This document shows positions 1-60,330 of a DNA stretch of 64,000 nt, in pieces. Source of the DNA: Haplodiscus bocki (lineage: Eukaryota). The stretch spans positions 88,722,001 through 88,786,000 of the forward strand of contig OZ296658.1 in assembly GCA_965655095.1 (NCBI GenBank). Direction: 5' to 3'. The notes under the pieces are model-generated. The model saw only the letters and a list, made by a program, of their open reading frames with translations. It was not told where the DNA came from and did not search any database. How positions within the stretch are numbered: position 1 is the first letter of the stretch; the number at the start of each line of letters is the position of its first letter. The translations under genes and the position numbers were made by a program.

Positions 1-870
1 TACTAGAGGTAACAACATCACTTTGTTAGTAATAGAAAATACAAGTAGAAAACCCTCGAGAGACTGGAATTTTAGATGAATGTTTCCAAGAAATGTTTTT
101 CTATTGGAATTCCATTAGTGCTTCGGGAAAAATGGATGGTGGGATTGAGGAGTTCTCAAGTTTACAAAATAGTTTGAATGATTTGACTGATAGAAACATT
201 ATATGCATTATATGAATTTTTCTAACCAATGTTTGTTATGAACGAAAACCTGTAGATGATGGTATTTCAAAATTAATGCTGATGGCGCATACCCCAAGCA
301 ACATAATTTACAATTCAATCTAGAACTGGTTGATTCTTATGGAAGTGATAGAAGAATTAGCGAGGATTTTCATTATTTGCGTGTTTTTGGATATCAAAAA
401 CGTAGAAGCTATAATTGAAGGTGTAAAAGATGACTTCCGCTGTCATTTTTTGAAGGAGGCATAGATGTGTAGATCAGTATGCAATCAACAACATGGGTGA
501 AAAGTCTTTTGGCTCCGTTTGGTTCGATCCAGTTGAAATTATCATCAATCCACCTGGATTATGTAAAATAACTGACATCGATAAAGCAATTGGAATTCAA
601 GTTTGAACAGATGATTTCTCAAGGAAATGTCTTCCCACAACACATCATCATTTAGTGTACACTCTAGGAAAGAATGAAGTTCTGGGTTTTACTTTTCATT
701 TTAGAAGCTGTAGAACAAATCGTTTGTGTCTTTGACTGGTCGAACAGTGATGAGGAAATTGTTATGGAAGCTATAAAAGAGATTGTGCATGCCTAAAAAT
801 TAGCTTTCGATTCATTCAAAAGAGAAAAGGAGTTTGTTGAATAAGCTCTAAAAAATGGTTTTCTTCCCAC

Positions 871-939
871 GTAAGCTGCTAAACTGGTTAAAAGTAGAAT
901 ATTGTTGTTACTTAAGCTTTAAGACCTAATTTTTTTTAG
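871..939 (+). other. Intron-like segment (69 nt) in the repeat unit
   Basis: GTAAGC donor at 871, CCTAAT branch-like site at 925-930, TTTTTTTAG acceptor ending at 939. Present in most copies; the donor GT is lost (AAAGAAAG) in units 20-22. Confidence 0.5.
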
Positions 940-2027
940 ATCACTCTTCGCTTCTGACTTACTGCTCAATGATAAGCTCTGAAATAATTTCGTCTAGCTT
1001 TAGAATTCGCTCATAGAATTCCGGAGATGGTTTGATGTTGTTTCATAGACCATAGACTTTTTTCGTGGTCAAGTGTGTGCTCCTTAGAAATTAGGAAATA
1101 GTGAAGTTCTTGTAAAAGCTGTAAAGTCACCCGTGTTCTTTGTGTTTCGCGTCAGAAAAATGCTAAAAATTGTTGAAGAATCTGTAGAAAAGTATGGGTT
1201 GATGTTGGCACAAGCTTCAGATAATTTCATACTCGAAAATGCAGTTGTTTTGAGGCAGTTAAAGAACCTCAAATTCCGGCTATTTGCATGCGAATAATTA
1301 AATAATTGGTATAGAAGCTATTGAATATGGTCTCCAAGTTGGATGTTTGCTAATCTAAACAGTAGCATAAATTGAATTCCAGTGCTGAAATCAAGGATAT
1401 TAGTCATCGCGAATTCCTTAATGGTAATACTTTTGTTGAATCACAAGGAATAAAATTGACTCCGTTTTCCAGTTTACAATGGTAGAGAAAGGTTATTTTT
1501 AACGTGATCAGTTCGGTAGAAAAATAGGTACAACTTCTTTCCTAATATTTAGGACAACCACTGGTTTGGAACAAACAGTTTTTTTTCGATGAGATGGAAA
1601 CCTAACTACTAAAAAGGAACCAACAACTCAAAAAAAATACTATCCTGAAGGAACTGAAATCAGAGATTTGATTTTGCTGAAGTTTCTGGAGTTACTATAA
1701 ATGACGAAAGGGAGTTTAGTTCAAGGAAACGAATTTCTTGCGAATTGAGATCAAATCGAAAAGTTGATGTTTAAGGTTGATGCTCTGTTAAAAACAAACT
1801 TTCAAAGTGGTTTTCGTGAAGGAAACTCAATTCGATGCTTTAATGTACAATAGAATAAAGTGCGAAACAGCATTTTTGTGGAGACAAATTGTTTCAAAAA
1901 TGATGTTCAATTGTTGTAATTTTTTTTCAAATTTGGTTTTTTTGCAATTGTTAGCATTAGTAGAATTTTTAGCAAATTATGATCCATGAAATAACACAAC
2001 AAGCAAAGTATTATAAAAGAAATACTC

Positions 2028-2079
2028 ATTGAATTAGAATTGGTTAGTGTGAAATTGAATTAGAATTGGTTAGTGTGAA
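2028..2079 (+). repeat. 26-bp perfect tandem duplication private to unit 1
   Basis: ATTGAATTAGAATTGGTTAGTGTGAA x2 (2028-2053, 2054-2079); single copy in other units. Confidence 0.95.
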
Positions 2080-2111
2080 TACTTATATGAAATTTGGTCC
2101 TGCATTAACAG
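2069..2111 (+). other. Mini-intron-like segment (43 nt)
   Basis: GTTAGT...TTAACAG, lying between two LRR-like coding remnants; the same segment is at 4972-5014 in unit 2. Confidence 0.4.
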
Positions 2112-2320
2112 CATCTGCCTTCAACCAACTTCTGGAACTCACTGGATTTTGTTTTCTGAAAATTACCGTTTAAATTCGTATGGTTGTGCGCAACGAAAAG
2201 TATTACTGAATCAACTGCCAAGGGAGCGTGGCGATTGTATTAACCTTTAATACGGAATCCGTCAACGATAGCTTACTTGCACGTTAGTGTTTGTATTCTG
2301 GATCTTTTTAACCATATGAG

Positions 2321-2952
2321 TTTCAAATATCAGAACAAATGACCATTATTTCAAACCTGCGGAGTAAGGTTCCTCAGCGAAGCGTTTTCGAGTCTCCTAT
2401 TGGACATCTCAAAGGATAACAACCTCTTTCATAGACCCAAATAGAAATCGATTGAACGAAGCACTACAAAACTTCAAAATTTTGCAGTCAATTTGTCATG
2501 TCTTCGAGTTGTGTTGACTGCATCACTAACTGCGTGTTGACTGGAAGATTTTTGAATTTGTCGTTAAAAATTAATGGACCGATCTGAATCTACTTCACTA
2601 ATGAATGTGAGTCTCTTCTACTAAAGAGTCTCTTTTTTTAAACTTTAATTTCAGATATCAAAACAAATACTCGAAACCTGTGGAGTTAGGTTCCTCAGCG
2701 AAGCTATTTCAAATCTTCGATATGACATGTCAAAGGATAACAGGATAACAACCTCGTTGATGAATCTAATCAAATCGATTGAACAAAGCACTACGAAACC
2801 TAAAATTTTTGCAGCTCAATGATCGTCTCTTTGAGATCTGTTGACTGCGTCAATAACTGCTAGTTGACTGGAAGATTTTTGGATTTGTCGGTAAAAATTC
2901 ATAGACCGATCTGAATGCACTTCAATAAGAATGTGAGTCTCCTCTACTAGAG
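2321..2952 (+). repeat. Internal ~320-bp diverged direct duplication (modules A and B) that defines the long 2.9-kb units
   Basis: A starts TTTCAAATATCAGAACAAAT...AAACCTGCGGAGTAAGGTTCCTCAGCGAAGC (2321). B starts TTTCAGATATCAAAACAAAT...AAACCTGTGGAGTTAGGTTCCTCAGCGAAGC (2649). Both end in GACCGATCTGAAT...GTGAGTCTC. Two modules are present in units 1-4, 6-8 and 11-13; one module in units 5, 9, 10 and 14-21. Confidence 0.93.
2607..2654 (+). other. Mini-intron-like segment (48 nt) separating the two internal LRR-like modules
   Basis: GTGAGT donor at 2607, T-rich tract, TTTCAG acceptor ending at 2654. A paralogous GTGAGT...AATAG segment (47 nt) lies at 2933-2979. Confidence 0.5.
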
Positions 2953-5900
2953 GTAACAACATCACTTTGTTAGTAATAGAAAATACAAGTAGAAAACCCT
3001 CGAGAGACTGGAATTTTAGATGAATGTTTCCAAGAAATGTTTTTCTATTGGAATTCCATTAGTGCTTCGGGAAAAATGGATGGTGGGATTGAGGAGTTCT
3101 CAAGTTTACAAAATAGTTTGAATGATTTGACTGATAGAAACATTATATGAATTTTTCTAACCAATGTTTGTTATGAACGAAAACCTGTAGATGATGGTAT
3201 TTCAAAATTAATGCTGATGGCGCATACCCCAAGCAACATAATTTACAATTCAATCTAGAACTGGTTGATTCTTATGGAAGTGATAGAAGAATTAGCGAGG
3301 ATTTTCATTATTTGCGTGTTTTTGGATATCAAAAACGTAGAAGCTATAATTGAAGGTGTAAAAGATGACTTCCGCTGTCATTTTTTGAAGGAGGCATAGA
3401 TGTGTAGATCAGTATGCAATCAACAACATGGGTGAAAAGTCTTTTGGCTCCGTTTGGTTCGATCCAGTTGAAATTATCATCAATCCACCTGGATTATGTA
3501 AAATAACTGACATCGATAAAGCAATTGGAATTCAAGTTTGAACAGATGATTTCTCAAGGAAATGTCTTCGCACAACACATCATCATTTAGTGTACACTCT
3601 AGGAAAGAATGAAGTTCTGGGTTTTACTTTTCATTTTAGAAGCTGTAGAACAATTCGTTTGTGTCTTTGACTGGTCGAACAGTGATGAGGAAATTGTTAT
3701 GGAAGCTATAAAAAAGATTGTGCATGCCTAAAAATTAGCTTTCGATTCATGCAAAAGAGAAAAGGAGTTTGATGAATAAGCTCTAAAAAATGGTTTTCTT
3801 CCCACGTAAGCTGCTGAACTGGTTAAAAGTAGAATATTGTTACTTAAGCTTTAAGACCTAATTTTTTTAGATCACTCTTCGCTTCTGACTTACTGCACAA
3901 TGATAAGCTCTGAAATAATTTCGTCTAGCTTTAGAATTCGCTCATAGAATTCCGGAGATGGTTTGATGTTGTTTCATAGACCATAGACTTTTTTCGTGGT
4001 CAAGTGTGTGCTCCTTAGAATTTAGGAAATAGTGAAGTTCTTGTAAAAGCTGTAAAGTCACCCGTGTTCTTTTTGTTTCGCGTCAGAAAAATGCTAAAAA
4101 TTTTGAAGAATCTGTAGAAAAGTATGGGTTGATGTTGGCACAAGCTTCAGATAATTTCATACTCGAAAATGCAGTTGTTTTGAGGCAGTTAAAGAACCTC
4201 AAATTCCGGCTATTTGCATGCGAATAATTAAATAATTGGTATAGAAGCTATTGAATATGGTCTCCAAGTTGGATGTTTGCTAATCTAAACAGTAGCATAA
4301 ATTGAATTCCAGTGCTGAAATCAAGGATATTAGTCATCGCGAATTCCTTAATGGTAATACTTTTGTTGAATCACAAGGAATAAAATTGACTCCGTTTTCC
4401 AGTTTACAATGGTAGAGAAAGGTTATTTTTAACGTGATCAGTTCGGTAGAAAAATAGGTACAACTTCTTTCCTAATATTTAGGACAACCACTGGTTTGGA
4501 ACAAACAGTTTTTTTTCGATGAGATGGAAACCTAACTATTAAAAAGGAACCAACAACTCAAAACAAATACTATCCTGAAGGAACTGAAATCAGAGATTTG
4601 ATTTTGCTGAAGTTTCTGGAGTTACTATAAATGACGAAAGGGAGTTTAGTTCAAGGAAACGAATTTATTGCGAATTGAGATCAAATCGAAAAGTTGATGT
4701 TTAAGGTTGATGCTCTGTTAAAAACAAACTTTCAAAGTGGTTTTCCTGAAGGAAACTCAATTCGATGCTTTAATGTACAATAGACTAAAGTGCGAAACAG
4801 GATATTTCTGGAGACAAATCGTTTCGAAAATGATGTTCAAGTGCTGTAATTTTTTTCAAAATTGGTTTCTTTGCAATTGTTAGCATTAGTAGAATTTTTA
4901 GCAAATTATGATCCATGAAATAACACAACAAGCAAAGTAATATAAAAGAAATGCTCATTGAATTAGAATTGGTTAGTGTGAATACTTATATGAAATTTGG
5001 TCTTGCATTAACAGCATCTGCCTTCAACCAACTTCTGGAACTCACTGGATTTTGTTGTGTGAAAATTACCATTTAATATCGTATGGTTGAGCGGAACGAA
5101 AAGTATTACTGAATCAACTGCCAAGGCAGCGTGGCGATTGTATTAACCTTTAATACGGAATCCATCAACGATAGCTTACTTGCACGTTAGTGTTTGTATT
5201 CTGGATCTTTTTAACCATATGAGTTTCAAATATCAGAACAAATGACCATTATTTCAAACCTGCGGAGTAAGGTTCCTCAGCGAAGCGTTTTCGAGTCTCC
5301 TATTGGACATCTCAAAGGATAACAACCTCTTTCATAGACCCAAATAGAAACCGATTGAACGAAGCACAAAACTTCAAAATTTTGCAGTTAATATGTCATG
5401 TCTTCGAGTTGTGTTGACTGCGTCACTAACTGCTGGTTGACTGGAAGATTTTTGAGTTTGTCGGTAAAAATAAATGGACCGATCTCAATTTACTTCAATA
5501 ATGAATGTGAGTCTCTTCTACTAAACAGTCTCTTCTTTTAAACTTCAGTTTCAGATATCAAAACATTTACTCGAAACCTGTGGAGTTAGGTTCCTCAGCG
5601 AAGCGATTTCAAATCTTCGATATGACATCTCAAATGATAACAGGATAACAACCTCGTTGATGAATCTAATCAAATCGATTGAACAAAGCACTACAAAACC
5701 AAAAGTTTTTGCAGCTCAATGATCGTCTCTTCGAGATCTGTTGACTGCGTCAATAACTGCTAGTTGACTGGAAGATTTTTGAGATGGTAGCTAAAATCAA
5801 AAAGACCCATCTGAATCTTCTTCAACAACGAAAGTGGGTCTCTTCGACTAAAGGTAGCAACATCACCTCAGTTGGTAATAGAAAATAAACATGAAAAACA

Positions 5901-8900
5901 CTCGAAAGATTGTTTTTTTAAATCAATGATTCCATAAATTGCTTTTCTTTTGGAAATCCGTCACAGCTTGGGGAAGAATGGGTGGTGGGATTAAGAAGTT
6001 CTCCAGGTTACAGAATAGTTTAATTAATACAACTGATAGAAACATCAGATGAAAGTTTCTTACCCCTGTTTATGAACGAAAACCTGTAGATAATGGTAAT
6101 TTGGAATTAATGCTGATGGCCAATACCCCAAGCAACATAATTTACAATTCAATCTAGAACTGGCTGATTCTTATGGAAGTGATAGAAGTTTTGATGAGGA
6201 TTTTCTTTGTTTGCATGATCTTGATCATTAAAAACTTTGAAAAAGCTATAATTGAGGGTTTAAACGGGGACATCAGATCTCATTTTTGAAGGAGACCCAG
6301 ATGTGTAGATCAGTATGCAATCAACATTATGGGCAAGAAGTTTATGCACTCCCTTTACTTTGATCCGGTTGAAACTGTTTACACTCCACCTGGTTTATGC
6401 GAGATGACTGACATCGGCAAAGCAATTGGAATTGAAGTTTGAACAGATGATTCCTCAAGGAAATGTCTTCGCACAACACATCATTATTTAGTGTACACTT
6501 AAGGAAAAAATGAATTTTTTGGTTTTACTTTTCAATTTAGAAGCTGTAGAACAATTGGTTTGTGTTTTGGAGTTTGTCTTTGACTAGTCCAACAGTGATT
6601 AGGAATTTGTTGTGGAAGCTATAAAAGAGAATGTGCTTGCCTAAAAATTAGCTTTCGGTTCATTCAAAAGAGAAAAGGAGTTTGTTGAATGAGCTTTAAA
6701 AATTGGTTTTCTTCCAAAGTAAACTGCTGAACTGGTTAAAAGTGGAATATTAATGCTACTTAAGCTTTAAGACGTAATGTTTTTTTAGATCACCCTTTGC
6801 TTCTGACTTACTGCACAATGATAAGCTGTAAATTAAATTTGTCTGGCTCTAGAATTCGCTCATAGAATTCCGGAGATGGTTAGGATGTTGTTTCATTGAC
6901 CATAATGTTTTTCGTGGTCAAGTGTGTGCTTCTTAGGAATTAGGAAATAATGAAGTTCTTGTACGTGCTGTAAAGGCAACTGTGTTCTTCATCTTTCGCC
7001 TGAGAAAAATTCTAAAAATTGTTGAAGAATCGGAAGAAAGGTATGGGTTGATGTTGGCACAAGCATCAGATAATTTGAAACTCGAAAATGCAGTTGTTTT
7101 TAGACAGTTAAAGAACCTAAAATGCCGTTTATTTGCACGCGAATAAATAATTAATTGGTATAGCAGCTGTTGAATATGGTCTCCAAGTTGGATGTTTGCT
7201 AATCTAAACAGTAGCTTAAAATGAATTCCATTGCTGAAATCAAGGAATTTAGTCAACGCGAGTTCCTTTTTGGTAATACTTTTGTTTAATCACAAGCAAT
7301 AAATTTGACTCCACTTTCTAGTTAACATTGTTGGAGAAAGGCTATTTTTAACGTGAGCACTTCGGTAGAAAAATAGGTACAACTTCTCTCTTAATATTCA
7401 GGACAACCACTGGTTTGGAACAAACAGTTTTTTTCGATGAGATAGGAACCTAGCTACCAAAAAAGAACCAACAACTCAAAAAAATTACTATCCTGAAAGG
7501 AACTGAAATCAGAGATTTGATTTTGCTGAAATTTCTGGAGTTACTATAATTGACGAAAAGGAGTTTAGTTCAAGGAAACGAATTTATTGCGAATTGAGAT
7601 CAAATCGAAAAGTTGATGTTTAAGGTTGATGTTCTGTTAAAAACAAACTTTCAAAGTCGTTTTCCTGAAGGAAACTCAATTCGATGCTTTAATGTACAAT
7701 AGAATAAAGTGCGAAACAGTATATTTGTGGAGACAAATCGTTTCAAAAATGATGTTCAAATGCTGTAATTTTTTTTCAAATTTGGTTTTCTTTGCATTTG
7801 TTAGCATTAGTAGACTTTTTAGCAAATTATGATCCACGAAATAACACAACAAGCAAAGTAATATAAAAGAAATGCTCATTGAATTAGAATTGGTTAGTGT
7901 GAATACTTATATGAAATTTGGTCTTGCATTAACAGCATCTGCCTTCAACCAACTTCTGGAACTCACTGGATTTTGTTGTGTGAAAATTACCATTTAATAT
8001 CGTATGGTTGAGCGCAACGAAAAGTATTACTGAATCAACTGCCAAGGGAGCGTGGCGATTGTATTAACCTTTAATACGGAATCCATCAACGATAGCTTAC
8101 TTGCACGTTAGTGTTTGTATTCTGGATCTTTTTAACCATATGAGTTTCAAATATCAGAACAAATGACCATTATTTCAAACCTGCGGAGTAAGGTTCCTCA
8201 GCGAAGCGTTTTCGAGTCTCCTATTGGACATCTCAAAGGATAACAACCTCTTTCATAGACCCAAATAGAAATCGATTGAACGAAGCACAAAACTTCAAAA
8301 TTTTGCAGTTAATTTGTCATGTCTTCGAGTTGTGTTGACTGGGTCACTAACTGCTGGTTGACTGGAAGATTTTTGAGTTTGTCGGTAAAAATAAATGGAC
8401 CGATCTCAATTTACTTATATAATGAATGTGAGTCTCTTTTACTAAACAGTCTCTTCTTTTAAACTTCAGTTTCAGATATCAAAACATTTACTCGAAACCT
8501 GTGGAGTTAGGTTCCTCAGCGAAGCGATTTCAAATCTTCGATATGACATCTCAAATGATAACAGGATAACAACCTCGTTGATGAATCTAATCAAATCGAT
8601 TGAACAAAGCACTACAAAACCAAAAGTTTTTGCAGCTCAATGATCGTCTCTTCGAGATCTGTTGACTGCGTCAATAACTGCTAGTTGACTGGAAGATTTT
8701 TGAGATGGTAGCTAAAATCAAAAAGACCCATCTGAATCTTCTTCAACAACGAAAGTGGGTCTCTTCGACTAAAGGTAGCAACATCACCTCAGTTGGTAAT
8801 AGAAAATAAACATGAAAAACACTCGAAAGATTGGTTTTTTAAATCAATGATTCCATAAATTGCTTTTCTTTTGGAAATCCGTCACAGCTTGGGGAAGAAT

Positions 8901-25700: not shown

Positions 25701-28700
25701 TTCCAAGAAATGTTTTTCTATTGGAATTCCATTAGTGCTTCGGGAAAAATGGATGGTGGGATTGAGGAGTTCTCAAGTTTACAGAATAGTTTGAATGATT
25801 TGACTGATAGAAACATTATATGAAATTTCTAACCAGTGTTTGTTATGAACGAAAACCTGTAGATTATGGTAATTTGGATTTAATGCTGATGGCCAATACC
25901 CCAAGCAACATAATTTACAATTCAATCTAGAACTGGCTGATTCTTATGAAAGTGATAGGAGTATTGATGAGGATTTTCTTCATTTGCATGATCTTGATCA
26001 TTAAAAACTTTGAAAAAGCTATAATTGAGGGTTTAAGCGGGGACATCAGATCTCATTTTTGAAAGAGGCCCAGATGTGTAGATCACTATGCAATCAACAT
26101 TATGGGCAAGAAGTTTATGCACACCCTTTACTTTGATCCGGTTGAAACTGTTTACACTCCACCTGGTTTATGTGAGATGACTGACATCGATAAAGCAATT
26201 GGAATTGAAGTTTGAACAGATGATTCCTCAAGGAAATGTCTTGGCACAACACATCATTATTTAGGGTACACTTTAGGAAAGAATGAAGTTTTGGGTTTTA
26301 CTTTTCAATTTAGAAGCTGTAGAACAATTCGTTTGTGTCTTTGACTAGTCGAACAGTGATGAGGAAATTGTTATGGAAGCTATAACATGGAAGATTGTTA
26401 TGGAAGATTGTGCATGACTAGAAATTAGCTTTCGATTCATTCAAAAGAGAAAAGGAGTTTGTTGAATAAGCTCTAAAAAATGGTTTTCTTCCCACGTAAG
26501 CTGCTGAATTGGTTAAAAGTAGAATATTGTTGTTACTTAAGGTTTAAGACCTAATGTTTTTTAGATCAGTCTTCGCTTCTGACTCACTGCACAATGATAA
26601 GCTGTGAAATAAATTCGTCTAGCTTTAGATTTCGCTCATAGAATTCCGGAGATGGTTTGATGTTGTTTCATAGACCATAATTTTTTTTCGTGGTCAAGTT
26701 TGTGCTTCTTAGAAATTAGGAAATAGTGAAGTTCTTGTAAAAGCTGTAAAGTCACCCGTGTTCTTTATGTTTCGCGTCAGAAAAATGCTAAAAATTGTTG
26801 AAGAATCTGTAGAAAAGTATGGGTTGATGTTGGCACAAGCATCAGATAATTTCATACTCGAAAATGCAGTTGTTTTTAGGCAGTTAAAGAACCTAAAAGT
26901 CCGGCTATTTGCATGCGAATAATTAAATAATTGGTATAGAAGCTATTGAATATGGTCTCCAAGTTGGATGTTTGCTAATCTAAACAGTAGCATAAATTGA
27001 ATTCCAGTGCTGAAATCAAGGATATTAGTCATCGCGAATTCCTTAATGGTAATACTTTTGTTGAATCACAAGCAATAAAATTGACTCCGCTTTCCAGTTT
27101 ACATTGGTAGAGAAAGGTTATTTTTAACGTGATCAGTTTGGTAGAAAAATAGGTACAACTTCTTTCCTAATATTTAGGACAACCACTGGCTTGGAACAAA
27201 CAGTTTTTTTTCGATGAGATAGAAACCTAGCTACTAAAAAGGAACCAACAACTCAAAAAAATACTATCCTGAAAGGAAGTGAAATCAGAGATGTGATTTA
27301 GCTGAAATTTCTGGAGTTACTATAAATGACGAAAGGGAGTTTAGTTCAAGGAAACGAATTTATTGCGAATTGAGATCAAATCGAAAAATTGATGTTTAAG
27401 GTTGATGCTCTGTTAAGAACAAACTTTCGAAGTGGTTTTCCCGAAGGAAACGCAATTCGATGCTTTAATGTACAATAGACTAAAGTGCGAAACAGGATAT
27501 TTGTGGAGACAACTCGTTTCAAAAATATGTTCAATTGTTGTAAATGTTTTTCAAAATTGGTTTCTTTGCAATTGTTAGCATTAGTAGAATTTTTAGCAGA
27601 TTGTGATCCATGAAATAACACAACAAGCAAAGTAACATAAAAGAAATACTCATTGAATTAGAATTGGTTAGTGTGAATACTTTTATGAAATTTGGTCTGG
27701 CATTAACAGCATCTGCCTTCAACCAACTTCTAGAACTCACTGGATTTTGTTTTCTGAAAATTACTGTTTAAATTCGTATGGTTGTGCGCAACGAAAAGTG
27801 TTACTGAATCAACTGCCAAGGGAGCGTGGCGATTGTATTAACCTTTAATACGGAATCCATCAACGATAGCTTACTTGCACGTTAGTGTTTATACTCTGGA
27901 TCTTTTTAACCTTATGAGTTTCAAATATCAGAACAAATGACCATTATTTCAAACTTGCGGAGTAAGGTTCCTCAGTGAAGCGTTTTCGAGTCTCCTATTG
28001 GACATCTCAAAGGATAACAACCTCTTTCATAGACCCAAATAGAAATCGATTGAACGAAGCACTACAGAACTTCAAAATTTTGCAGTTAATTTGTCATGTC
28101 TTCGAGATGTGTTGTCTGCGTCACTAACTGCTGGTTGACTGGAAGATTTTTGAGATGGTAGCTAAAAGTAAATAGACCGATCTGAATCTACTTCAATAAT
28201 GAAAGTCAGTCTCTTCGACTAAAGGTAGCTAAATCACTTCAGTCAGTAATGAAAAATACACATGAAAAACCCACGAGAGACTGGTTTTTTAAATCAATGC
28301 TTCCAAAAATTGCTTTTCGTTTGGAAATCCATTACAGCTTCGGGGAAAATGGATGATGGGATTAAGAAGTTCTCCAGTTTACGGAATAGTTTAATTGATA
28401 TCACTGATAGAAACCTCACATGAAAGTTTCTTACCCATGTTTGTTATAAACGAAATCCTTTAGATAATGGTAATTTAGAATTAATGCTGGTCGCGATTAC
28501 CCCAAACAACACAACTTACATTTCAATCTAGAACTGGCTGATTCTTATGGAAGTGATAGAAGTTTTGATGAGGATTTTCTTTATTTGCATGATCTTGATC
28601 ATTAAAAACTTTGAAAAAGCTATAATTGAGGGTTTAAACGGGGACATCAGATCTCATTTTTGAAGGAGGCCCAGATGTGTAGATCAGTATGCAATCAACA

Positions 28701-31700
28701 TTATGGGCAAGAAGTTTATGCACTCCCTTTACTTTGAGATCCGGTTGAAACTGTTTACACTCCACCTGGTTTATGTGAGATGACTGACATCGATAAAGCA
28801 ATTGGAATTGAAGTTTGAACAGATGATTCCTCAAGGAAATGTCTTCGCACAACACATCATTATTTAGGGTACACTTTAGGAAAGAATGAAATTTTGGGTT
28901 TTACTTTTCATTTTAGAAGCTGTAGAACAATTCGTTTGTGTCTTTGAGTGGTCGAACAGTGATGAGGAAATTGTTATGGAAGCTATAAAAGAGATTGTGC
29001 ATGCCTAAAAATTAGCTTTCGATTCATGCAAAAGAGAAAAGGAGTTTGTTGAATGAGCTTTAAAAATTGGTTTTCTTCCAAAGTAAGCTGCTGAACTGGT
29101 TAAAAGTGGAATATTAATGCTACTTAAGCTTTAAGACGTAATGTTTTTTTAGATCACCCTTTGCTTCTGACTTACTGCACAATGATAAGCTGTAAATTAA
29201 ATTTGTCTGGCTCTAGAATTCGCTCATAGAATTCCGGAGATGGTTAGGATGTTGTTTCATTGACCATAATGTTTTTCGTGGTCAAGTGTGTGCTTCTTAG
29301 AAATTAGGAAATAATGAAGTTCTTGTAAGTGCTGTAAAGTCAACTGTGTTCTTCATCTTTCGCCTGAGAAAAATTCTAAAAATTGTTGAAGAATCGGAAA
29401 AAAGGTATGGGTTGATGTTGGCACAAGCATCAGATAATTTGAAACTCGAAAATGCAGTTGTTTTTAGACAGTTAAAGAACCTAAAATGCCGTTTATTTGC
29501 ACGCGAATAAATAATTAATTGGTATAGCAGCTGTTGAATATGGTCTCCAAGTTGGATGTTTGCTAATCTAAACAGTAGCTTAAAATGAATTCCATTGCTG
29601 AAATCAAGGAATTTAGTCAACGCGAGTTCCTTTATGGTAATACTTTTGTTTAATCACAAGCAATAAATTTGACTCCGCTTTCTAGTTAACATTGTTGGAG
29701 AAAGGCTATTTTTAACGTGAGCACTTCGGTAGAAAAATAGGTACAACTTCTCTCTTAATATTTAGGACAACCACTGGTTTGGAACAAACAGTTTTTTTCG
29801 ATGAGATAGGAACCTAGCTACCAAAAAAGAACCAACAACTCAAAAAAATTACTATCCTGAAAGGAACTGAAATCAGAGATTTGATTTTGCTGAAATTTCT
29901 GGAGTTACTATAATTGACGAAAAGGAGTTTAGTTCAAGGAAACGAATTTATTGCGAATTGAGATCAAATCGAAAAGTTGATGTTTAAGGTTGATGTTCTG
30001 TTAAAAACAAACTTTCAAAGTCGTTTTCCTGAAGGAAACTCAATTCGATGCTTTAATGTACAACAGAATAAAGTGCGAAACAGTATATTTGTGGAGACAA
30101 ATCGTTTCAAAAATGATGTTCAAATGCTGTAATTTTTTTTTTCAAATTTGGTTTTCTTTGCATTTGTTAGCATTAGTAGACTTTTTAGCAAATTATGATC
30201 CACGAAATAACACAACAAGCAAAGTAATTTAGAAGAAATAATCATTGAATTAGAATTGGTTAGTGTGAATTCTTATTTGAAAGTTGGTCTTGTATTAACA
30301 GCATCTGCCTTCAACCAACTTCTGGAACTCACTGGATTTTGTTTTCTGAAAATTACCGTTTAAATTCGTATGGTTGTGCGCAACGAAAAGTATTACTGAA
30401 TCAACTGCCAAGGGAGCGTGGCGATTGTATTAACCTTTAATACGGAATCCATCAACGATAGCTTACTTGCACGTTAGTGTTTGTATTCTGGATCTTTTTA
30501 ACCATATGAGTTTCAAATATCAGAACAAATGACCATTATTTCAAACCTGCGGAGTAAGGTTCCTCAGCGAAGCGTTTTCGAGTCTCCTATTGGACATCTC
30601 AAAGGATAACAACCTCTTTCATAGACCCAAATAGAAATCGATTGAATGAAGCACTACAAAACTTCAAAATTTTGCAGTTAATTTGTCATGTCTTCGAGTT
30701 GTGTGGACTGCGTCACTAACTGCGTGTTGACTGGAAGATTTTTGAGTTTGTCGTTAAAAATAAATGGACCGATCTGAATGTACTTCACTAATGAATGTGA
30801 GTCTCTTCTACTAAAGAGTCTCTTTTTTTAAACTTTAATTTCAGATATCAAAACAAATACTCGAAACCTGTGGAGTTAGGTTCCTCAGCGAAGCGATTTC
30901 AAATCTTCGATATGACATCTCAAAGGATAACAGGATAACAACCTCGTTGATGAATCTAATCAAATCGATTGAACAAAGCACTACAAAACCAAAAGTTTTT
31001 GCAGCTCAATGATCGTCTCTTCGAGATCTGTTGACTGCGTCAATAACTGCTAGTTGACTGGAAGATTTTTGAGATGGTAGCGAAAATCAAAAAGACCCAT
31101 CTGAATCTTCTTCAACAACGAAAGTGGGTCTCTTCGACTAAAGGTAGCAACATCACCTCAGTTGGTAATAGAAAATAAACATGAAAAACACTCGAGAGAT
31201 TGGTTTTTTAAATCAATGATTCCATAAATTGCTTTTCTTTTGGAAATCCGTCACAGCTTGGGGAAGAATGGGTGGTGGGATTAAGAAGTTCTCCAGGTTA
31301 CAGAATAGTTTAATTAATACAACTGATAGAAACATCAGCTGAAAGTTTCTTACCCCTGTTTATGAACGAAAACCTGTAGATAATGGTAATTTGGAATTAA
31401 TGCTGATGGCCAATACCCCAAGCAACATAAATTACAATTCAATCTGGAACTGGCTGATTCTTATGGAAGTGATAGAAGTTTTGATGAGGATTTTGTTTGT
31501 TTGCATCATCTTGATCATTAAATGCTCTTGATCTTGAAAAAGCTATAATTGAGGGTTTAAAGGGGGACATCAGATCTCATATTTGAAGGAGACATAGATG
31601 TGTTGATCGGTATGCAATCAACAGCATGGGCAAGAAGTTTATGCGCTCCCTGTGGTTTGATCCAGTTGAATTTACCATCACTCCACCTGGATTATGTGAA

Positions 31701-53200: not shown

Positions 53201-56200
53201 CATCATTATTTAGTGTACACTTTAGGAAAGAATGAAGTTTTGGGTTTTACTTTTCATTTTAGAAGCTGTAGAACAATTCGTTTGTGTTTTGGAGTTTGTC
53301 TTTGACTAGTCCAACAGTGATGAGGAAATTGTTATGGAAGCTATAAAAGAGATTGTGCATGGCTAAAAATTAGCTTTCGATTCATTCAGAAGAGAAAAGG
53401 AGTTTGTTGAATTAGCTTTAAAATGTGGTTTTCTTCCAAAGAAAGCTGCTGAACTGGTCAAAAGTGGAATATTGTTGCTACTTATGCTTTAAGACGTAAT
53501 GATTTTTAGATCACCCTTCGCATCTCCGCTTCTGACTTATTGCACAATGTCTAGCTGTAAATTAAATTTGTCTGGCTCTAGATTTCGCTCATAGACATCC
53601 GGAGATGGTTAAGATGTTGTTTCATAGGCCATAAATATTTTTCATGGTCAAGTGTGTGCTTCTTAGATTATAGGAAATAATGAAGTTCTTGTAAAAGTTG
53701 TAAAGTCACCCGTGTTCTTTATCGTTCGCGTCAGGAAAATGCTAAAAATTGTTGAAGAGTCTGAAAAGTATGTGTTGAAGTTGGCACAAGCATCAGATAT
53801 TTTCAAACTCGGAAATGCAGTTGTTTTTAGGCAGTTAAAGAACCTAGAATTCCGTTTATCTGCATGCGAATAATTAAATATTTGGTATAGAAGCTGTTGA
53901 ATATGGTCTCCAAGTTGGATGTTTGCTAATCTAAACCGTAGCATTAAATGAATTCCATTGCTGAAATCAAAGAATTTAGTCATCGCGAATTCTTTAATGG
54001 TAATACTTTTGTTGAATCACAAGCAATAAATTTGACTCCGCTTTCTAGTTAACATTGTTGGAGAAAAGCTATTTTTAACGTGAGCAGTTCGGTAGAAAAA
54101 TGGGTACAACTTCTCTCTTAATTTTTAGGACAACCACCGGTTTGGAACAAACAGTTTTTTTCGATGAGATAGGAACCTAGCTACCAAAAAGGAACCAACA
54201 ACTCAAAAAAATTACTATCCTGAAAGCATCTTAAATCAGAGATTTGATTTTGCTGAAGTTTCTGGAGTTACTATAAATGACGAAAGGGAGTTTAGTTCAA
54301 GGAAACGAATTTATTGCGAATTGAGATCAAATCGAAAAGTTGATGTTTAAGGTTGATGCTCTGTTAAAAACAAACTTTCAAAGTGGTTTTCCTGAAGGAA
54401 ACTTAATTCGATGCTTTAATGTACAATAGACTAAAGTGCGAAACAGCATATTTGTGGAGACAAATCGTTTCGGAAATGATGTTCAAGTGCTGTAATTTTT
54501 TTCAAAATTGGATTTCTTTGCAATTGTTAGCATTACTAGACTTTTTAGCAAATTATGATCCACGAAATAACACAACAAGCAAAGTAATTTACAAGAAATA
54601 CTCCTTAAATTAGAATAGGTTAGTGTGAATTCTTATATGAAAGTTGGTCTTGTATTAACACCATCTGCCTTCAACCAACTTCTGGAACTCACTGGTTTTT
54701 TTTGTATGAGAATTACCTTTTAAATTCGTATGGTTGTGCGCAACGAAAAGTATTACTGAATCAACTGCCAAGGGTGCTTGGTGATTGTACTTACATATAA
54801 TACCGAATCGAACAACACAAGCTTACTTGCACGTTAGTGTTTGTGTATTCTGTATCTTTTTAAACTTATGATTTTCAAATGTCAAAACAAATGACCAATG
54901 TTTCAAACTTGTGGAGTTGGGTTGCTCAGCGATGCTTTTTCAAGTCTTCTATTGGACGTCTCAAAGGATAACAACCTTTTTCATGGAGTGAAATAGAAAT
55001 CAATTGAACGAAGCACTACAGTAGAACTGTAAAGATTTGCAGTTAATTCATCTTCTGTGCGAGATGTGTTGACTGCACTGCGTCAATAACTGCTGGTTGA
55101 CTGGAAGATTTTAGAGTTGTTTGCTAAAAGTAAATAGACCGATCTGAATCTACTTCAATAATGAAAGTCAGTCTCTTCGACTAAAGGTAGCTAAATCACT
55201 TCAGTCAGTAATGAAAAATACACATGAAAAACCCACGAGAGACTGGTTTTTTGAATCAATGCTTCCAAAAATTGCTTTTCGTTTGGAAATCCATTACAGC
55301 TTCGGGGAAAATGGATGGTGGGATTACGAAGTTCTCCAGTTTACAGAATAGTTTAATTGATATCACTGATAGAAACCTCACATGAAAGTTTCTTACCCAT
55401 GTTTGTTATAAACGAAAACCTTTAGATAATTGTAATTTAGAATTAATGCTGGTCGCGATTACCCCAAACAACACAACTTACATTTCAATCTAGAACCGGC
55501 TGATTCTTATGGAAGTGATGGAAGTATTGGCCTGGATTTTCATTATTTGCATGATCTTGATCATCAAAAACATAGAAAAAGCTATAATTGAGGGTTTAAA
55601 GGAAGAGATCGGTTCTCATTTTTTTGAAGGAGACCCAGATGTGTAGATCAGTATGCAATCAACAACATGGGTAAAAAGTTTATGCGCTCCTTTTGGTTCG
55701 ATCCGGTTTAAATTATCATCACTCCACCTGGTTTATGTGAAATGACTGACATCGATAAAGCAATTGGAATTGAAGTTTGATCAGATGATTTCTCAAGGAA
55801 ATGTGTTCGCACAACACATCATTATTTAGTGTACACTTTAGGAAAGAATGAAGTTTTGGGTTTTACTTTTCATTTTAGAAGCTGTAGAACAATTCGTTTG
55901 TGTTTTGGAGTTTGTCTTTGACTAGTCCAACAGTGATGAGGAAATTGTTATGGAAGCTATAAAAGAGATTGTGCATGGCTAAAAATTAGCTTTCGATTCA
56001 TTCAGAAGAGAAAAGGAGTTTGTTGAATTAGCTTTAAAATGTGGTTTTCTTCCAAAGAAAGCTGCTGAACTGGTCAAAAGTGGAATATTGTTGCTACTTA
56101 TGCTTTAAGACGTAATGATTTTTAGATCACCCTTCGCATCTCCGCTTCTGACTTATTGCACAATGTCTAGCTGTAAATTAAATTTGTCTGGCTCTAGATT

Positions 56201-59200
56201 TCGCTCATAGACATCCGGAGATGGTTAAGATGTTGTTTCATAGGCCATAAATATTTTTCATGGTCAAGTGTGTGCTTCTTAGATTATAGGAAATAATGAA
56301 GTTCTTGTAAAAGTTGTACGGTCACCCGTGTTCTTTATCGTTCGCGTCAGGAAAATGCCAAAAATTGTTGAAGAGTCTGAAAAGTATGTGTTGATGTTGG
56401 CACAAGCATCAGATATTTTCAAACTCGGAAATGCAGTTGTTTTTAGGCAGTTAAAGAACCTAGAATTCCGTTTATCTGCATGCGAATAATTAAATATTTG
56501 GTATAGAAGCTGTTGAATATGGTCTCCAAGTTGGATGTTTGCTAATCTAAACCGTAGCATTAAATGAATTCCATTGCTGAAATCAAAGAATTTAGTCATC
56601 GCGAATTCTTTAATGGTAATACTTTTGTTGAATCACAAGCAATAAATTTGACTCCGCTTTCTAGTTAACATTGTTGGAGAAAAGCTATTTTTAACGTGAG
56701 CAGTTCGGTAGAAAAATTGGTACAACTTCTCTCTTAATTTTTAGGACAACCACCGGTTTGGAACAAACAGTTTTTTTCGATGAGATAGGAACCTAGCTAC
56801 CAAAAAGGAACCAACAACTCAAAAAAATTACTATCCTGAAAGCATCTTAAATCAGAGATTTGATTTTGCTGAAGTTTCTGGAGTTACTATAAATGACGAA
56901 AGGGAGTTTAGTTCAAGGAAACGAATTTATTGCGAATTGAGATCAAATCGAAAAGTTGATGTTTAAGGTTGATGCTCTGTTAAAAACAAACTTTCAAAGT
57001 GGTTTTCCTGAAGGAAACTTAATTCGATGCTTTAATGTACAATAGACTAAAGTGCGAAACAGCATATTTGTGGAGACAAATCGTTTCGGAAATGATGTTC
57101 AAGTGCTGTAATTTTTTTCAAAATTGGATTTCTTTGCAATTGTTAGCATTACTAGACTTTTTAGCAAATTATGATCCACGAAATAACACAACAAGCAAAG
57201 TAATTTACAAGAAATACTCCTTAAATTAGAATAGGTTAGTGTGAATTCTTATATGAAAGTTGGTCTTGTATTAACACCATCTGCCTTCAACCAACTTCTG
57301 GAACTCACTGGTTTTTTTTGTATGAGAATTACCTTTTAAATTCGTATGGTTGTGCGCAACGAAAAGTATTACTGAATCAACTGCCAAGGGTGCTTGGTGA
57401 TTGTATTTACATATAATACGGAATCGAACAACACAAGCTTACTTGCACGTTAGTGTTTGTGTATTCTGTATCTTTTTAAACTTATGATTTTCAAATGTCA
57501 AAACAAATGACCAATGTTTCAAACTTGTGGAGTTGGGTTGCTCAGCGATGCTTTTTCAAGTCTTCTATTGGACGTCTCAAAGGATAACAACCTTTTTCAT
57601 GGAGTGAAATAGAAATCAATTGAACGAAGCACTACAGTAGAACTGTAAAGATTTGCAGTTAATTCATCTTCTGTGCGAGATGTGTTGACTGCACTGCGTC
57701 AATAACTGCTGGTTGACTGGAAGATTTTAGAGTTGTTTGCTAAAAGTAAATAGACCGATCTGAATCTGCTTCAATAATGAAAGTCAGTCTCTTCGACTAA
57801 AGGTAGCACATCACTTCAGTCAGTAATGAAAAATACACATGAAAAACCCACGAGAGACTGGTTTTTTAAATCAATGCTTCCAAAAATTGCTTTTCGTTTG
57901 GAAATCCATTACAGCTTCGGGGAAAATGGATGGTGGGATTACGAAGTTCTCCAGTTTACAGAATAGTTTAATTGATATCACTGATAGAAACCTCACATGA
58001 AAGTTTCTTACCCATGTTTGTTATAAACGAAAACCTTTAGATAATTGTAATTTAGAATTAATGCTGGTCGCGATTACCCCAAACAACACAACTTACATTT
58101 CAATCTAGAACCGGCTGATTCTTATGGAAGTTATGGAAGTATTGGCGAGGATTTTCATTATTTGCATGATCTTGATCATCAAAAACATAGAAAAAGCTAG
58201 AATTGAGAGTTTAAAGGAAGAGATCGGTTCTCATTTTTTTGAAGGAGACCCAGATGTGTAGATCAGTATGCAATCAACAACATGGGTAAAAAGTTTATGC
58301 GCTCCGTTTGGTTTCATCCGGTTTAAATTATCATCACTCCACCTGGTTTATGTGAAATGACTGACATCGATAAAGCAATTGGAATTGAAGTTTGATCAGA
58401 TGATTTCTCAAGGAAATGTGTTCGCACAACACATCATTATTTAGTGTACACTTTAGGAAAGAATGAAGTTTTGGGTTTTACTTTTCATTTTAGAAGCTGT
58501 AGAACAATTCGTTTGTGTTTTGGAGTTTGTCTTTGACTAGTCCAACAGTGATGAGGAAATTGTTATGGAAGCTATAAAAGAGATTGTGCATGGCTAAAAA
58601 TTAGCTTTCGATTCATTCAGAAGAGAAAAGGAGTTTGTTGAATTAGCTTTAAAATGTGGTTTTCTTCCAAAGAAAGCTGCTGAACTGGTCAAAAGTGGAA
58701 TATTGTTGCTACTTATGCTTTAAGACGTAATGATTTTTAGATCACCCTTCGCATCTCCGCTTCTGACTTATTGCACAATGTCTAGCTGTAAATTAAATTT
58801 GTCTGGCTCTAGATTTCGCTCATAGACATCCGGAGATGGTTAAGATGTTGTTTCATAGGCCATAAATATTTTTCATGGTCAAGTGTGTGCTTCTTAGATT
58901 ATAGGAAATAATGAAGTTCTTGTAAAAGTTGTAAAGTCACCCGTGTTCTTTATCGTTCGCGTCAGGAAAATGCTAAAAATTGTTGAAGAGTCTGAAAAGT
59001 ATGTGTTGAAGTTGGCACAAGCATCAGATATTTTCAAACTCGGAAATGCAGTTGTTTTTAGGCAGTTAAAGAACCTAGAATTCCATTTATCTGCATGCGA
59101 ATAATTAAATATTTGGTATAGAAGCTGTTGAATATGGTCTCCAAGTTGGATGTTTGCTAATCTAAACCGTAGCATTAAATGAATTCCATTGCTGAAATCA

Positions 59201-59908
59201 AAGAATTTAGTCATCGCGAATTCTTTAATGGTAATACTTTTGAATCACAAGCAATAAATTTGACTCCGCTTTCCAGTTTACAAAGTTAGAGAAAAGTTTT
59301 TTTTATAACGTGAGCAGTTCGGTAGACAAATAGGTACAACTTCTCTCCTAATATTTAGGACAATCACTGGTTTGGAACAAACCGTTTCTCGATGAGATAG
59401 AAACCTAGCTACCAAAAAGAAACCAACGACTCAGAAAAAATTACTTTTCTGAAAGGAACTGAAATCAGAAATTTGATTTTGCTGAATTTTCTGGAGTTAC
59501 TGCCAATGACGAAAGGGAGTTTAGTTCAAGGAATCGAATTTATTGCGATTTGAGATCAAATCGAAAAAGTGATGTTTAAGGTTGATGCTCTGTTGAGAAC
59601 AATCTTTCGAAGTGGTTTTCCCGAAGGAAACGCAATTCGATGCTTTAATGTACAATAAAGTGCGAAACAGCATTTTTGTGGAGACAAATTGTTTCAAAAA
59701 TGATGTTCAATTGTTGTAAATGTTTTTCAAAATTGGGTTTCTTTGCAATTGTTAGCATTAGTAGAATTTTTAGCGAACTATGATCCAAAAAATAGCACAA
59801 CCAGCAATTTACAAGAGATAGTCACTGAATTAGCATTGTTAGTGTGAGTACTTATATGAAAGTTGGTCTTGTGTTAACAGAATATGCCTTCAACCAACTT
59901 CTGGTAAT

Positions 59909-60216
59909 CATGTTTGTTATAAACGAAAACCTTTAGATAATAGTAATTTAGAATTAATGCTGGTCGCGAATACCCCAAACAACGTAACTTACAATTCAAT
60001 CTAGAACCGGCTGATTCTTATGGAAGTTATGGAAGTATTGGCGAGGATTTTCATTATTTGCATGATCTTGATCATCAAAAACATAGAAAAAGCTAGAATT
60101 GAGAGTTTAAAGGATGAGATCGGATCTCATTTTTTGAAGGAGGCCCAGATGTGTAGATTAGTATGCAATCAACAACATGGGTAAAAAGTTTATGCGCTCC
60201 GTTTGGTTTGATCCGG
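59909..60216 (+). repeat. Terminal fragment of the repeat unit after a ~710-bp deletion
   Basis: Junction ...CAACTTCTGG|TAAT|CATGTTTGTTAT at 59904-59909 skips the sequence equivalent to 57302-58012. Confidence 0.9.
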
Positions 60217-60330
60217 ACGATGTTCAAGCAGCTTTGTGTCTGCATCAGCATGTGCTGTAACTCTTCGATCCGACTCCTCGTGAGTACTTCATGAGTCTGT
60301 TAGAGCAAACTGACGCAGGTGTATGAAGTG
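60217..60330 (-). mobile_element. Possible relic of an XPG/PIN-like nuclease of the type carried by Academ DNA transposons
   Basis: The minus strand at 60288-60247 reads STHEESDRRVTAHA, resembling the SxHEEADTRxxxHA motif. It is a single motif with a stop just upstream, and no TIRs were seen. Confidence 0.3.

What the first reader, a model, noticed from the sequence alone, without database searches (positions are those of the whole stretch)
1..60216. A >60-kb macrosatellite apparently built from a dead NLR (NACHT-LRR) immune-receptor gene
Seen: 21+ head-to-tail 2.6-2.9-kb units with no spacer DNA, whose + strand carries EVLGFT..EAVEQFV..AIKE(N), KLAFD, EFAHRIPEM, DLILLKFLELL, LALVEFL, SENYRLNSYGC, CGVRFLSEA and QKLLFVWKSITASG/QEMFFYWNSISASG in colinear order. 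Known: this order matches the NACHT-associated helical domain, winged helix (FxHxxxQE) and ribonuclease-inhibitor-like LRRs of animal NLRs. Inference: the copies share the same large deletions and lack a P-loop, so amplification happened after the gene died. That would make this a gene-derived satellite rather than an NLR gene cluster. Possible roles include a heterochromatic or centromeric block, a small-RNA source targeting live NLRs, or a gene-conversion donor library; none is demonstrated by the sequence.
Basis: partly seen in the sequence, partly recalled or inferred. Interest (0 to 1): 0.85.

Follow-up and report, generated by a model that had tools for sequence, protein, structure and literature searches.

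The report
Satellite built from dead DUF4116 gene
This is a real, single-locus 133-kb tandem repeat of 1.2-3.3-kb units that looks like decaying non-coding DNA; its only recognisable protein fossil is a DUF4116 helical-repeat gene fragment, not an NLR immune receptor, so it is an ordinary example of a gene- or transposon-derived satellite.

Summary
The window carries 22 head-to-tail units of 2.37-2.94 kb (83-100% identical) from base 57 to 60216, with no spacers, and every quoted peptide is present. The array continues upstream. In all it spans about 132.7 kb (contig C11, 88,649,5xx-88,782,216) in three sub-arrays: a 3.26-kb higher-order unit, a 1.24-kb unit and the window's 2.6-2.9-kb unit. 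It occurs nowhere else in the 1.5-Gb assembly.

The NLR reading does not hold. NACHT, NOD2_WH and NLRC4_HD2 searches of the genome never hit the array. No quoted piece matches a NACHT, winged-helix or LRR model in Pfam at E up to 10. The quoted motifs lie in all three frames.

The only recurring family is DUF4116 (PF13475). It scores 15.6-19.9 bits, below the 24.9-bit cut-off. A profile of this genome's own DUF4116 repeats scores 22.3 bits, against a maximum of 8.4 in 100 shuffles, and a reciprocal search agrees.

A stop inside the repeat is shared by all sub-families, and no codon-position bias remains.

A truncated Polinton abuts the left edge, and DUF4116 genes here usually sit in Polintons. 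An earlier scan note on the adjacent window had already proposed DUF4116. No function is indicated.

The parts
1..60216 (+). The window's share of the macrosatellite: the tail of one unit (1-56) plus 22 C-type units. Unit starts: 57, 3001, 5903, 8824, 11730, 14326, 17241, 20162, 23085, 25674, 28274, 31193, 34117, 37028, 39612, 42208, 44800, 47418, 50014, 52620, 55236, 57851.
   Evidence: the array continues 72.5 kb upstream of the window
28274..31192 (+). Representative 2.92-kb unit (unit 11).
28880..29260 (+). DUF4116-like fossil in unit 11, in one reading frame with about 9 stops: ..ILEAVEQFV.., DEEIVMEAIKEIVHA*, KLAFDS.KREKEFVE*ALK.., ..LALEFAHRIPEM. The same segment recurs in every unit, about 600-990 bp from the unit start.
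   Evidence: Pfam PF13475 19.9 bits, E 5.6e-4, for 28880-29005 and 19.7 bits for 3603-3728; local DUF4116 profile 22.3 bits against a shuffle maximum of 8.4; alignment; frames
29301..29510 (+). Weaker DUF4116-like continuation in the next frame (KLGNNEVLV.AVKS.., ..AQASDNLKLENAVV..). In the older A-type units the same stretch is open for up to 149 aa (ENEVGMEAVKQYKDAFSL..).
   Evidence: no relatives outside the array among 1.84 billion representative proteins
30543..31143 (+). Internal sub-repeat of about 320 bp (1.8-1.9 copies, 76-78% alike), which carries CGVRFLSEA. It is present twice in 2.9-kb units and once in 2.6-kb units.
57851..60216 (+). Last, truncated and most diverged unit (82-89% identity to the others). 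It is consensus 1-2038 followed by a 305-bp fragment of consensus 164-465. The array ends at 60216.
60217..64000 (.). Right flank: unrelated DNA of 40% G+C (the array is 34%), with no Polinton similarity. A weak LINE-type endonuclease fragment lies further on, in L009.

Best explanation
This is a single-locus, non-coding macrosatellite. A stretch of about 2.6 kb that contained an already broken DUF4116 helical-repeat gene fragment, probably cargo of a Polinton/Maverick element, was duplicated in tandem. It was then expanded, contracted and locally homogenised by unequal crossing-over or replication slippage. That produced three diverged sub-arrays (A: 3.26-kb higher-order unit; B: 1.24-kb unit; C: 2.6-2.9-kb unit) totalling about 133 kb. 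It encodes no protein and evolves neutrally.

Shown: the array structure, its uniqueness in the assembly, the absence of open frames and of codon bias, the shared stop, and DUF4116 similarity above shuffled background. Inferred: the mechanism of expansion, the Polinton-cargo source of the DUF4116 fragment (my odds about 0.45), and the absence of function.
For: Array structure and sub-arrays. Blocks of several units were duplicated inside the array (units 3/7, 4/8 and 15/18 are 98-99% identical, units 20/21 100%), as unequal exchange predicts.

Uniqueness: two 600-bp DNA segments and the 149-aa piece hit only C11:88,649,495-88,782,216.

No coding capacity: the longest open frame is 149 aa, and the consensus has stops in every frame. 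Diversity by codon position in the DUF frame is 0.038/0.082/0.044, so there is no third-position excess. A-to-C identity is a uniform 69-84% per 100 bp. There are no Rfam matches.

DUF4116 similarity:
- Pfam PF13475 is the only recurring family, at 15.6-19.9 bits in both the A and C variants.
- A profile of the genome's own DUF4116 repeats scores 22.3, 16.0 and 10.7 bits on C, A and B units, against maxima of 8.4, 11.6 and 9.2 in 100 dinucleotide shuffles each. All top hits are on the + strand.
- tblastx of the consensus against the DUF4116 locus L030 gives 36% identity over 56 aa, E 3.9e-5.
- The spacing between EIVMEAIKE and EFVELALK is 25 aa, and the B unit has a lag-75 autocorrelation of z 3.2.
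- The array-derived profile A1 finds outside the array places that Pfam also calls DUF4116 (C9:68205378-554, C9:68344164, C1414:17184).

Dead before amplification: the stop after ..IKE(N)xHA sits at the same codon in A1, A2, B and C (TAA/TAG/TGA/TAA).

Polinton link: the left flank holds a Pox_A32 packaging ATPase (32.8 bits, cut-off 22.8) and capsid-gene remnants. Homology to a fuller Polinton (L043) ends 43 bp before the array. Eleven of the 12 best DUF4116 loci lie within 1.5 kb of Polinton-like sequence.
Against: Every Pfam DUF4116 score is below the curated cut-off (24.9 bits). The non-array hits of the reciprocal profile are marginal (E 0.003-0.9).

Only about 0.4-0.7 kb of the 2.6-kb unit shows the similarity. 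The other roughly 1.9 kb has no recognisable origin.

The unit has no similarity to the Polinton copy examined or to the flanks of 12 DUF4116 loci outside the repeat region. The array lies beyond a truncated capsid gene, not where DUF4116 cargo sits in the other copies. The Polinton-cargo origin is therefore circumstantial.

No RNA, small-RNA, methylation or chromatin data could be examined, so 'no function' is a default and not a result.
Confidence: 0.72

Rival explanations
1. One reading: the unit is a dead NACHT-LRR (NLR) immune-receptor gene that was amplified after pseudogenisation.
For: Short peptides on the + strand recall NLR motifs (EVLGFT, F.H....E, leucine-rich stretches), and all are present. 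The idea of death before amplification is right.
Against: The array is not hit by NACHT, NOD2_WH or NLRC4_HD2 in whole-genome six-frame searches. No NLR-related Pfam family appears at E up to 10 for any motif-bearing piece. The genome's own NACHT open frames give no tblastn match to the unit. The motifs lie in three frames, and EVLGFT overlaps MKFWVLLF out of frame. The supposed helical and winged-helix motifs fit DUF4116 repeats. There is no 84-87-nt LRR periodicity.
Confidence: 0.03
2. The unit has no genic origin. The DUF4116 resemblance is chance in AT-rich DNA, and the array is a plain anonymous macrosatellite.
For: All curated-model scores are below threshold. Most of the unit matches nothing. 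Open frames occur on both strands of the same region.
Against: The local profile scores far above 100 shuffles in the C and A units. The same family recurs in variants about 25% diverged. The hits lie on one strand and in one frame, with the family's 25-aa spacing. Reciprocal hits fall on Pfam DUF4116 places.
Confidence: 0.13
3. The unit derives from Polinton core genes (a penton or minor-capsid fossil joined to a DUF4116 repeat), as an earlier scan note proposed.
For: A truncated Polinton with ATPase and capsid-gene remnants directly abuts the array. Its penton-like frame contains an LLGF motif.
Against: blastn and tblastx between the unit consensuses and 10.5 kb of the flanking Polinton or 20.7 kb of a fuller copy give nothing at E up to 0.1. 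The EVLGFT peptide is an out-of-frame reading of the DUF4116-like stretch. The piece that carries it matches no Pfam family.
Confidence: 0.03
4. The array has a chromosomal or regulatory role, such as a chromosome-specific centromere or heterochromatin block, or a one-strand small-RNA cluster. This could hold whatever its origin.
For: It is a large one-orientation array about 3 Mb from the end of a 91.8-Mb chromosome-scale contig. CpG observed/expected is 0.73 in the array, against 0.95 in the left flank. It has persisted long enough for sub-families to diverge by about 25%.
Against: The family is absent from all other chromosomes. No sub-element is conserved between sub-families. It shares no DNA identity with any possible target. 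No RNA run holds it.
Confidence: 0.07

Closest known systems
Gene- or pseudogene-derived macrosatellites (for example human D4Z4 built around DUX4; reviewed in PMC5687341 and PMC13558733)
   Same: Kilobase-scale units lie in a head-to-tail array at one locus. The monomer carries a gene-derived segment. There are higher-order units and local homogenisation.
   Different: No unit here keeps an open frame, and the gene fragment covers only about a quarter of the unit. No expression or chromatin data exist. The source family is DUF4116, not a transcription factor.
Satellites seeded by transposable elements (review PMC9659126; a hAT-derived 58-kb array in this same genome, scan note s1-366627)
   Same: A tandem array has grown from a fragment of, or next to, a mobile element, and then decays. 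The same genome shows at least one other case.
   Different: The unit itself has no detectable similarity to Polinton core sequence. The link rests on adjacency and on DUF4116 genes being Polinton cargo elsewhere in this genome.
DUF4116 (PF13475) helical-repeat proteins
   Same: There are about 25-residue repeats of the pattern D.E(I/V)V.EA(V/I)K.N..A(L)..(Y/F)(A/S), several in a row in one frame.
   Different: Scores are below the Pfam cut-off and the repeats are riddled with stops, so this is a fossil and not a member protein.
Animal NLR (NACHT-LRR) genes
   Same: Only short peptide resemblances.
   Different: The NACHT, winged-helix, HD2 and LRR models all fail to match.

Membership tests
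NLR (NACHT-LRR) gene or pseudogene | NACHT NTPase domain (PF05729), with or without a P-loop | tested here: not met
   The whole-genome six-frame search scored 90 candidates and gave 6 matches, none in C11:88.65-88.78 Mb. No NACHT hit appears in Pfam scans of 29 pieces at E up to 10. tblastn of the genome's own NACHT frames against the unit gave a best E of 0.29.
NLR (NACHT-LRR) gene or pseudogene | NACHT-associated winged helix or helical domain (NOD2_WH PF17779, NLRC4_HD2 PF17776) | tested here: not met
   Genome-wide searches at E up to 10 gave two weak hits each, none on C11. The EFAHRIPEM piece matches no family.
NLR (NACHT-LRR) gene or pseudogene | Ribonuclease-inhibitor-type LRRs with a 28-29-aa period | tested here: not met
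   The pieces with CGVRFLSEA, SENYRLNSYGC, LALVEFL and the ..WKSITASG motifs match no LRR family at E up to 10. Autocorrelation shows no peak at lags 84-87. Very decayed LRRs could escape these tests.
DUF4116 (PF13475) repeat | Match to the curated Pfam model at or above 24.9 bits | tested here: not met
   The best scores are 19.9, 19.7, 18.8, 18.3 and 15.6 bits (E 5.6e-4 to 0.012) in C- and A-type variants. DUF4116 is the only family that recurs, but always below the cut-off.
DUF4116 (PF13475) repeat | Similarity above composition-matched background, on one strand and in one frame | tested here: met
   A local profile built from 23 repeats of this genome scores 22.3, 16.0 and 10.7 bits on C, A and B units. 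The maxima in 100 dinucleotide shuffles are 8.4, 11.6 and 9.2. All top windows are on the + strand. tblastx against L030 gives E 3.9e-5.
DUF4116 (PF13475) repeat | Tandem repeats of about 25 residues | tested here: met
   EIVMEAIKE.. and EFVE.ALK.. lie 25 residues apart in one frame. The B unit shows a lag-75 autocorrelation of z 3.2. A single-repeat scoring matrix gives 6-8 hits on the + strand, against 1.2-3.2 expected.
DUF4116 (PF13475) repeat | Reciprocal hit: a profile of the array segment finds known DUF4116 places | tested here: inconclusive
   The non-array hits of profile A1 include C9:68205378-554, C9:68344164 and C1414:17184, all Pfam DUF4116 places. Their E-values are only 0.07-0.9, and the best non-array hit has E 0.003.
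Macrosatellite | Head-to-tail units of 1 kb or more, without spacers, at one or a few loci | tested here: met
   About 51 units of 1.24-3.26 kb span 132.7 kb at a single locus.
Polinton/Maverick-derived sequence | Similarity of the unit to Polinton core genes (pPolB, integrase, A32 ATPase, capsid proteins) | tested here: not met
   The unit gives no blastn or tblastx hit to the flanking remnant or to L043. Only adjacency and the cargo habit of DUF4116 genes link them.
Centromeric satellite | CENP-A occupancy, or the family shared among centromeres | not testable with these tools
   No chromatin data are available. The family occurs on one chromosome only.

The most novel reading that the evidence does not exclude
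A fragment of a Polinton cargo gene (DUF4116) seeded a chromosome-specific 133-kb one-orientation array that the host now uses, for instance as a heterochromatin or centromere-like block or as a one-strand small-RNA cluster against the thousands of Polintons in this genome.
Probability: 0.05. Interest if true: 0.6.

Novelty: new member of a known kind. Interest (0 to 1): 0.22.

Why it matters
The main value is as a correction. The claim of an NLR-derived satellite would have been notable, but it does not survive testing, so the locus should not be counted as immune-gene material.

What remains is a clean, fully assembled example of how a broken gene fragment, probably virus-like transposon cargo, becomes a long satellite. 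It has three diverged sub-arrays and higher-order units. That makes it useful for studies of satellite birth and turnover, and for repeat annotation of this genome.

The side observation may deserve more attention than the array. This genome holds thousands of Polinton ATPase copies and more than a thousand DUF4116 repeat candidates, and these mostly lie next to Polinton genes.

Tried and rejected
- NLR origin: rejected after the NACHT, NOD2_WH and NLRC4_HD2 genome searches, the Pfam scans and tblastn with the genome's own NACHT frames.
- Dispersed transposon: rejected, because no copy exists outside the locus. The first DNA search with a whole unit failed for size.
- Polinton capsid origin: rejected for lack of any similarity.
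- Best open frame (149 aa, L014:6352-6798): an exhaustive HMMER search of 1.84 billion representatives found only itself and one other open frame with 89% identity over residues 47-149, presumably called from another A-type unit of this array (origin not checked). The ESM Atlas feature search gave noise only (Hsp90 fragments at 0.89, low recognition). Pfam gave only E above 0.03.
- Structured RNA: no Rfam match at gathering thresholds.
- Live gene cluster with small exons: rejected on the shared stops, the lack of codon-position bias and uniform divergence.
- Expression: no RNA run holds the sequence, and only four DNA runs from one study do, so expression could not be assessed.
- Read laying returned only contigs. 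These show presence in two samples but give no copy number.
- The organism was not identified, because names are coded.

Full report
OBSERVATION

A self-comparison of the window and a MAFFT alignment of the units show 22 consecutive head-to-tail units from base 57 to 60216. Twenty-one are 2584-2944 bp and the last is a truncated 2366 bp. There is no spacer, and pairwise identity is 82-100%.

Units of 2.9 kb and 2.6 kb differ by one extra copy of an internal sub-repeat of about 320 bp. Near-identical units recur at distances of several units (3/7, 4/8 and 15/18 at 98-99%; 20/21 at 100%). Blocks of several units were therefore duplicated inside the array.

EXTENT

The window is G000:C11:88,722,001-88,786,000 on a 91.8-Mb contig of a 1.5-Gb assembly. 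I fetched 220 kb upstream and 10 kb downstream.

The array starts at about C11:88,649,493 and ends at 88,782,216, about 132.7 kb. It has three sub-arrays:
- A: about 13 copies of a 3.26-kb higher-order unit (consensus positions 231-2538 plus a second copy of 71-943), about 75% identical to the window consensus.
- B: about 12 units of 1.24 kb (positions 224-1395), about 78% identical.
- C: 26 units of the window type.

Two 600-bp DNA segments of the unit and its best open frame hit only this interval in the whole assembly. It is therefore a single-locus macrosatellite. It is neither a dispersed element nor a satellite shared among chromosomes.

A 485-kb ENA contig matches the left junction at 99.95% over 20.6 kb. 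Contigs of runs from two samples hold array sequence, at higher word depth than the flank, and also the right flank. No RNA run holds the sequence.

CODING CAPACITY

No open frame exceeds 149 aa on either strand anywhere in the 133 kb. The consensus of the window units has stops in all frames, and its longest open stretch is 69 aa.

Diversity among the window copies shows no third-position excess in the candidate frames (0.038/0.082/0.044 in the DUF frame). Identity between the A and C consensuses is a flat 69-84% per 100 bp, so no conserved sub-element stands out. Nucleotide autocorrelation shows no 3-base periodicity. Rfam finds nothing.

THE NLR READING

- A whole-genome six-frame NACHT search scored all 90 candidates. 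It returned 6 matches, none in the array.
- NOD2_WH and NLRC4_HD2 searches at E up to 10 returned two weak hits each, none on C11.
- Pfam scans at E up to 10 of 29 pieces, including every piece that carries a quoted motif, gave no NACHT, winged-helix or LRR family.
- tblastn of the genome's own NACHT open frames against the unit consensus gave nothing better than E 0.29.
- The quoted motifs lie in all three frames of a unit. EVLGFT is an out-of-frame reading of the bases that encode MKFWVLLF in the neighbouring motif's frame.

WHAT THE UNIT DOES RESEMBLE

An earlier scan note on the adjacent window (s1-359344) proposed DUF4116, and I tested that.

- Curated model: Pfam PF13475 is the only family that recurs. 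It scores 19.9 and 19.7 bits in C-type copies and 18.8 and 15.6 bits in A-type copies (E 5.6e-4 to 0.012). All are below the 24.9-bit cut-off.
- Genome background: the genome is very rich in real DUF4116 repeats. The first look found 1363 candidates, and 148 of the 150 scored matched, down to E 4e-15.
- Local profile: I built a profile from 23 of those repeats. It scores 22.3, 16.0 and 10.7 bits on C, A and B units. The maxima over 100 dinucleotide-preserving shuffles of each unit are 8.4, 11.6 and 9.2. All top windows are on the + strand.
- Frame and spacing: in unit 11 one frame reads ..ILEAVEQFV..DEEIVMEAIKEIVHA*KLAFDS.KREKEFVE*ALK......LALEFAHRIPEM.. (window 28880-29260). It shows the family's 25-residue spacing.
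- Weaker repeats: these follow in the next frame (KLGNNEVLV.AVK; ENEVGMEAVKQYKDAFSL in A units).
- Pairwise match: tblastx of the consensus against the DUF4116 locus L030 gives 36% identity over 56 aa, E 3.9e-5.
- Periodicity: the B unit has a lag-75 autocorrelation peak of z 3.2.
- Reciprocal search: a profile of the array's own segment (A1) finds, outside the array, places that Pfam also calls DUF4116 (C9:68205378-554, C9:68344164, C1414:17184). The E-values are marginal, 0.07-0.9.

Only about 0.4-0.7 kb of the unit shows this similarity. The rest matches nothing in Pfam, in the ESM Atlas, in 1.84 billion representative proteins or elsewhere in the genome.

ORDER OF EVENTS

In an alignment of the A1, A2, B and C versions, the stop directly after ..IKE(N)xHA lies at the same codon in all four (TAA, TAG, TGA, TAA). 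It sits inside a repeat that continues after it. The common ancestor of all units was therefore already broken.

SURROUNDINGS

The 2.4 kb to the left of the array holds an open frame for a Pox_A32-type packaging ATPase (L015:5140-5775; 32.8 bits, cut-off 22.8). It has more than 2,293 relatives with E up to 0.001 in the protein database; the best 120 listed are mostly 71-80% identical and come from long ENA contigs.

A fuller element from the same ENA assembly (L043) carries the ATPase, a double-jelly-roll capsid gene and an rve integrase. It is a Polinton/Maverick. Homology of the left flank to L043 ends inside the capsid gene, 43 bp before the first satellite base.

Neither the flanking remnant nor L043 shares any similarity with the unit. 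The right flank has no Polinton similarity. The 'penton fossil' reading of earlier notes is therefore not supported for the unit itself.

Eleven of the 12 best DUF4116 loci do lie within 1.5 kb of sequence that resembles L043 genes. This agrees with earlier notes that DUF4116 genes are Polinton cargo in this genome. A Polinton-cargo source for the fossil is thus plausible but circumstantial.

MECHANISM AND FUNCTION

The simplest account is tandem duplication of a dead fragment, followed by unequal exchange. That explains the higher-order units, the loss or gain of the 320-bp sub-repeat, the near-identical neighbouring blocks and the more diverged edge units.

CpG observed/expected is 0.73 in the array, against 0.95 in the left flank. 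This is at most a hint of methylation.

A small-RNA role against live paralogs is unlikely, because the unit shares no DNA similarity with any other locus. A centromeric or heterochromatic role cannot be tested here.

COMPARISON WITH KNOWN CASES

Gene-derived macrosatellites (PMC5687341, PMC13558733) and transposon-seeded satellites (PMC9659126) are well known. The same genome has a hAT-derived array (scan note s1-366627). Only four held papers mention DUF4116, and no title or abstract among the best-ranked papers of the satellite searches links it, or Polinton cargo, to satellites.

VERDICT

The array is real, and the reading of a dead gene amplified into a satellite is right in kind. The gene is not an NLR. 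The detectable fossil is DUF4116-like. It is a new member of a known kind, of low to moderate interest.

Noticed in passing
L015:4598-7490 (C11:88,646,6xx-88,649,49x), just left of the array: A truncated Polinton/Maverick remnant. It holds an open Pox_A32-type packaging ATPase frame (212 aa), a 127-aa frame that aligns to the penton-like genes of a fuller copy, and the first part of a double-jelly-roll capsid gene with an internal deletion of about 860 bp. Homology ends 43 bp before the satellite.
   Followed up: partly
genome-wide; example L043 (ENA ERZ26859043 ctg88233): The Polinton ATPase has more than 2,293 relatives with E up to 0.001; the best 120 listed are mostly 71-80% identical and come from long ENA contigs. 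This suggests a very large expansion of Polintons in this genome. L043 keeps open frames for the ATPase, the DJR capsid protein and the rve integrase.
   Followed up: partly
L030-L041 (12 best DUF4116 loci of the genome): Eleven of the 12 loci have sequence within 1.5 kb that resembles Polinton genes of L043 at the translated level. Several encode GF(D/N)-type pentapeptide repeats ahead of the DUF4116 repeats. DUF4116 genes therefore look like common Polinton cargo here. The genome has at least 1363 DUF4116 candidates.
   Followed up: partly
G000:C3:135,082,600-135,103,000: DUF4116 hits recur every 5.06 kb or so, with open frames of 128-244 aa. This may be a tandem cluster of intact DUF4116 genes or tandem Polinton pieces.
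   Followed up: no
window 57500-57760 and 60208-60753: One 930-letter contig of run X4 (the second sample) joins the right flank to array sequence on opposite strands, with 123 other letters between them. This is either a graph artefact or a structural variant at the array edge in that sample.
   Followed up: no
L009:1013-1330 (about 5 kb right of the array): A weak Exo_endo_phos match (18 bits) and neighbouring open frames suggest a decayed LINE-type retrotransposon.
   Followed up: no
whole genome: Vertebrate-type NLR helical domains are almost absent: the best NOD2_WH hit has E 0.15 and the best NLRC4_HD2 hit E 1.3. Only 6 NACHT matches reached E 0.001 among the 90 candidates scored.
   Followed up: no
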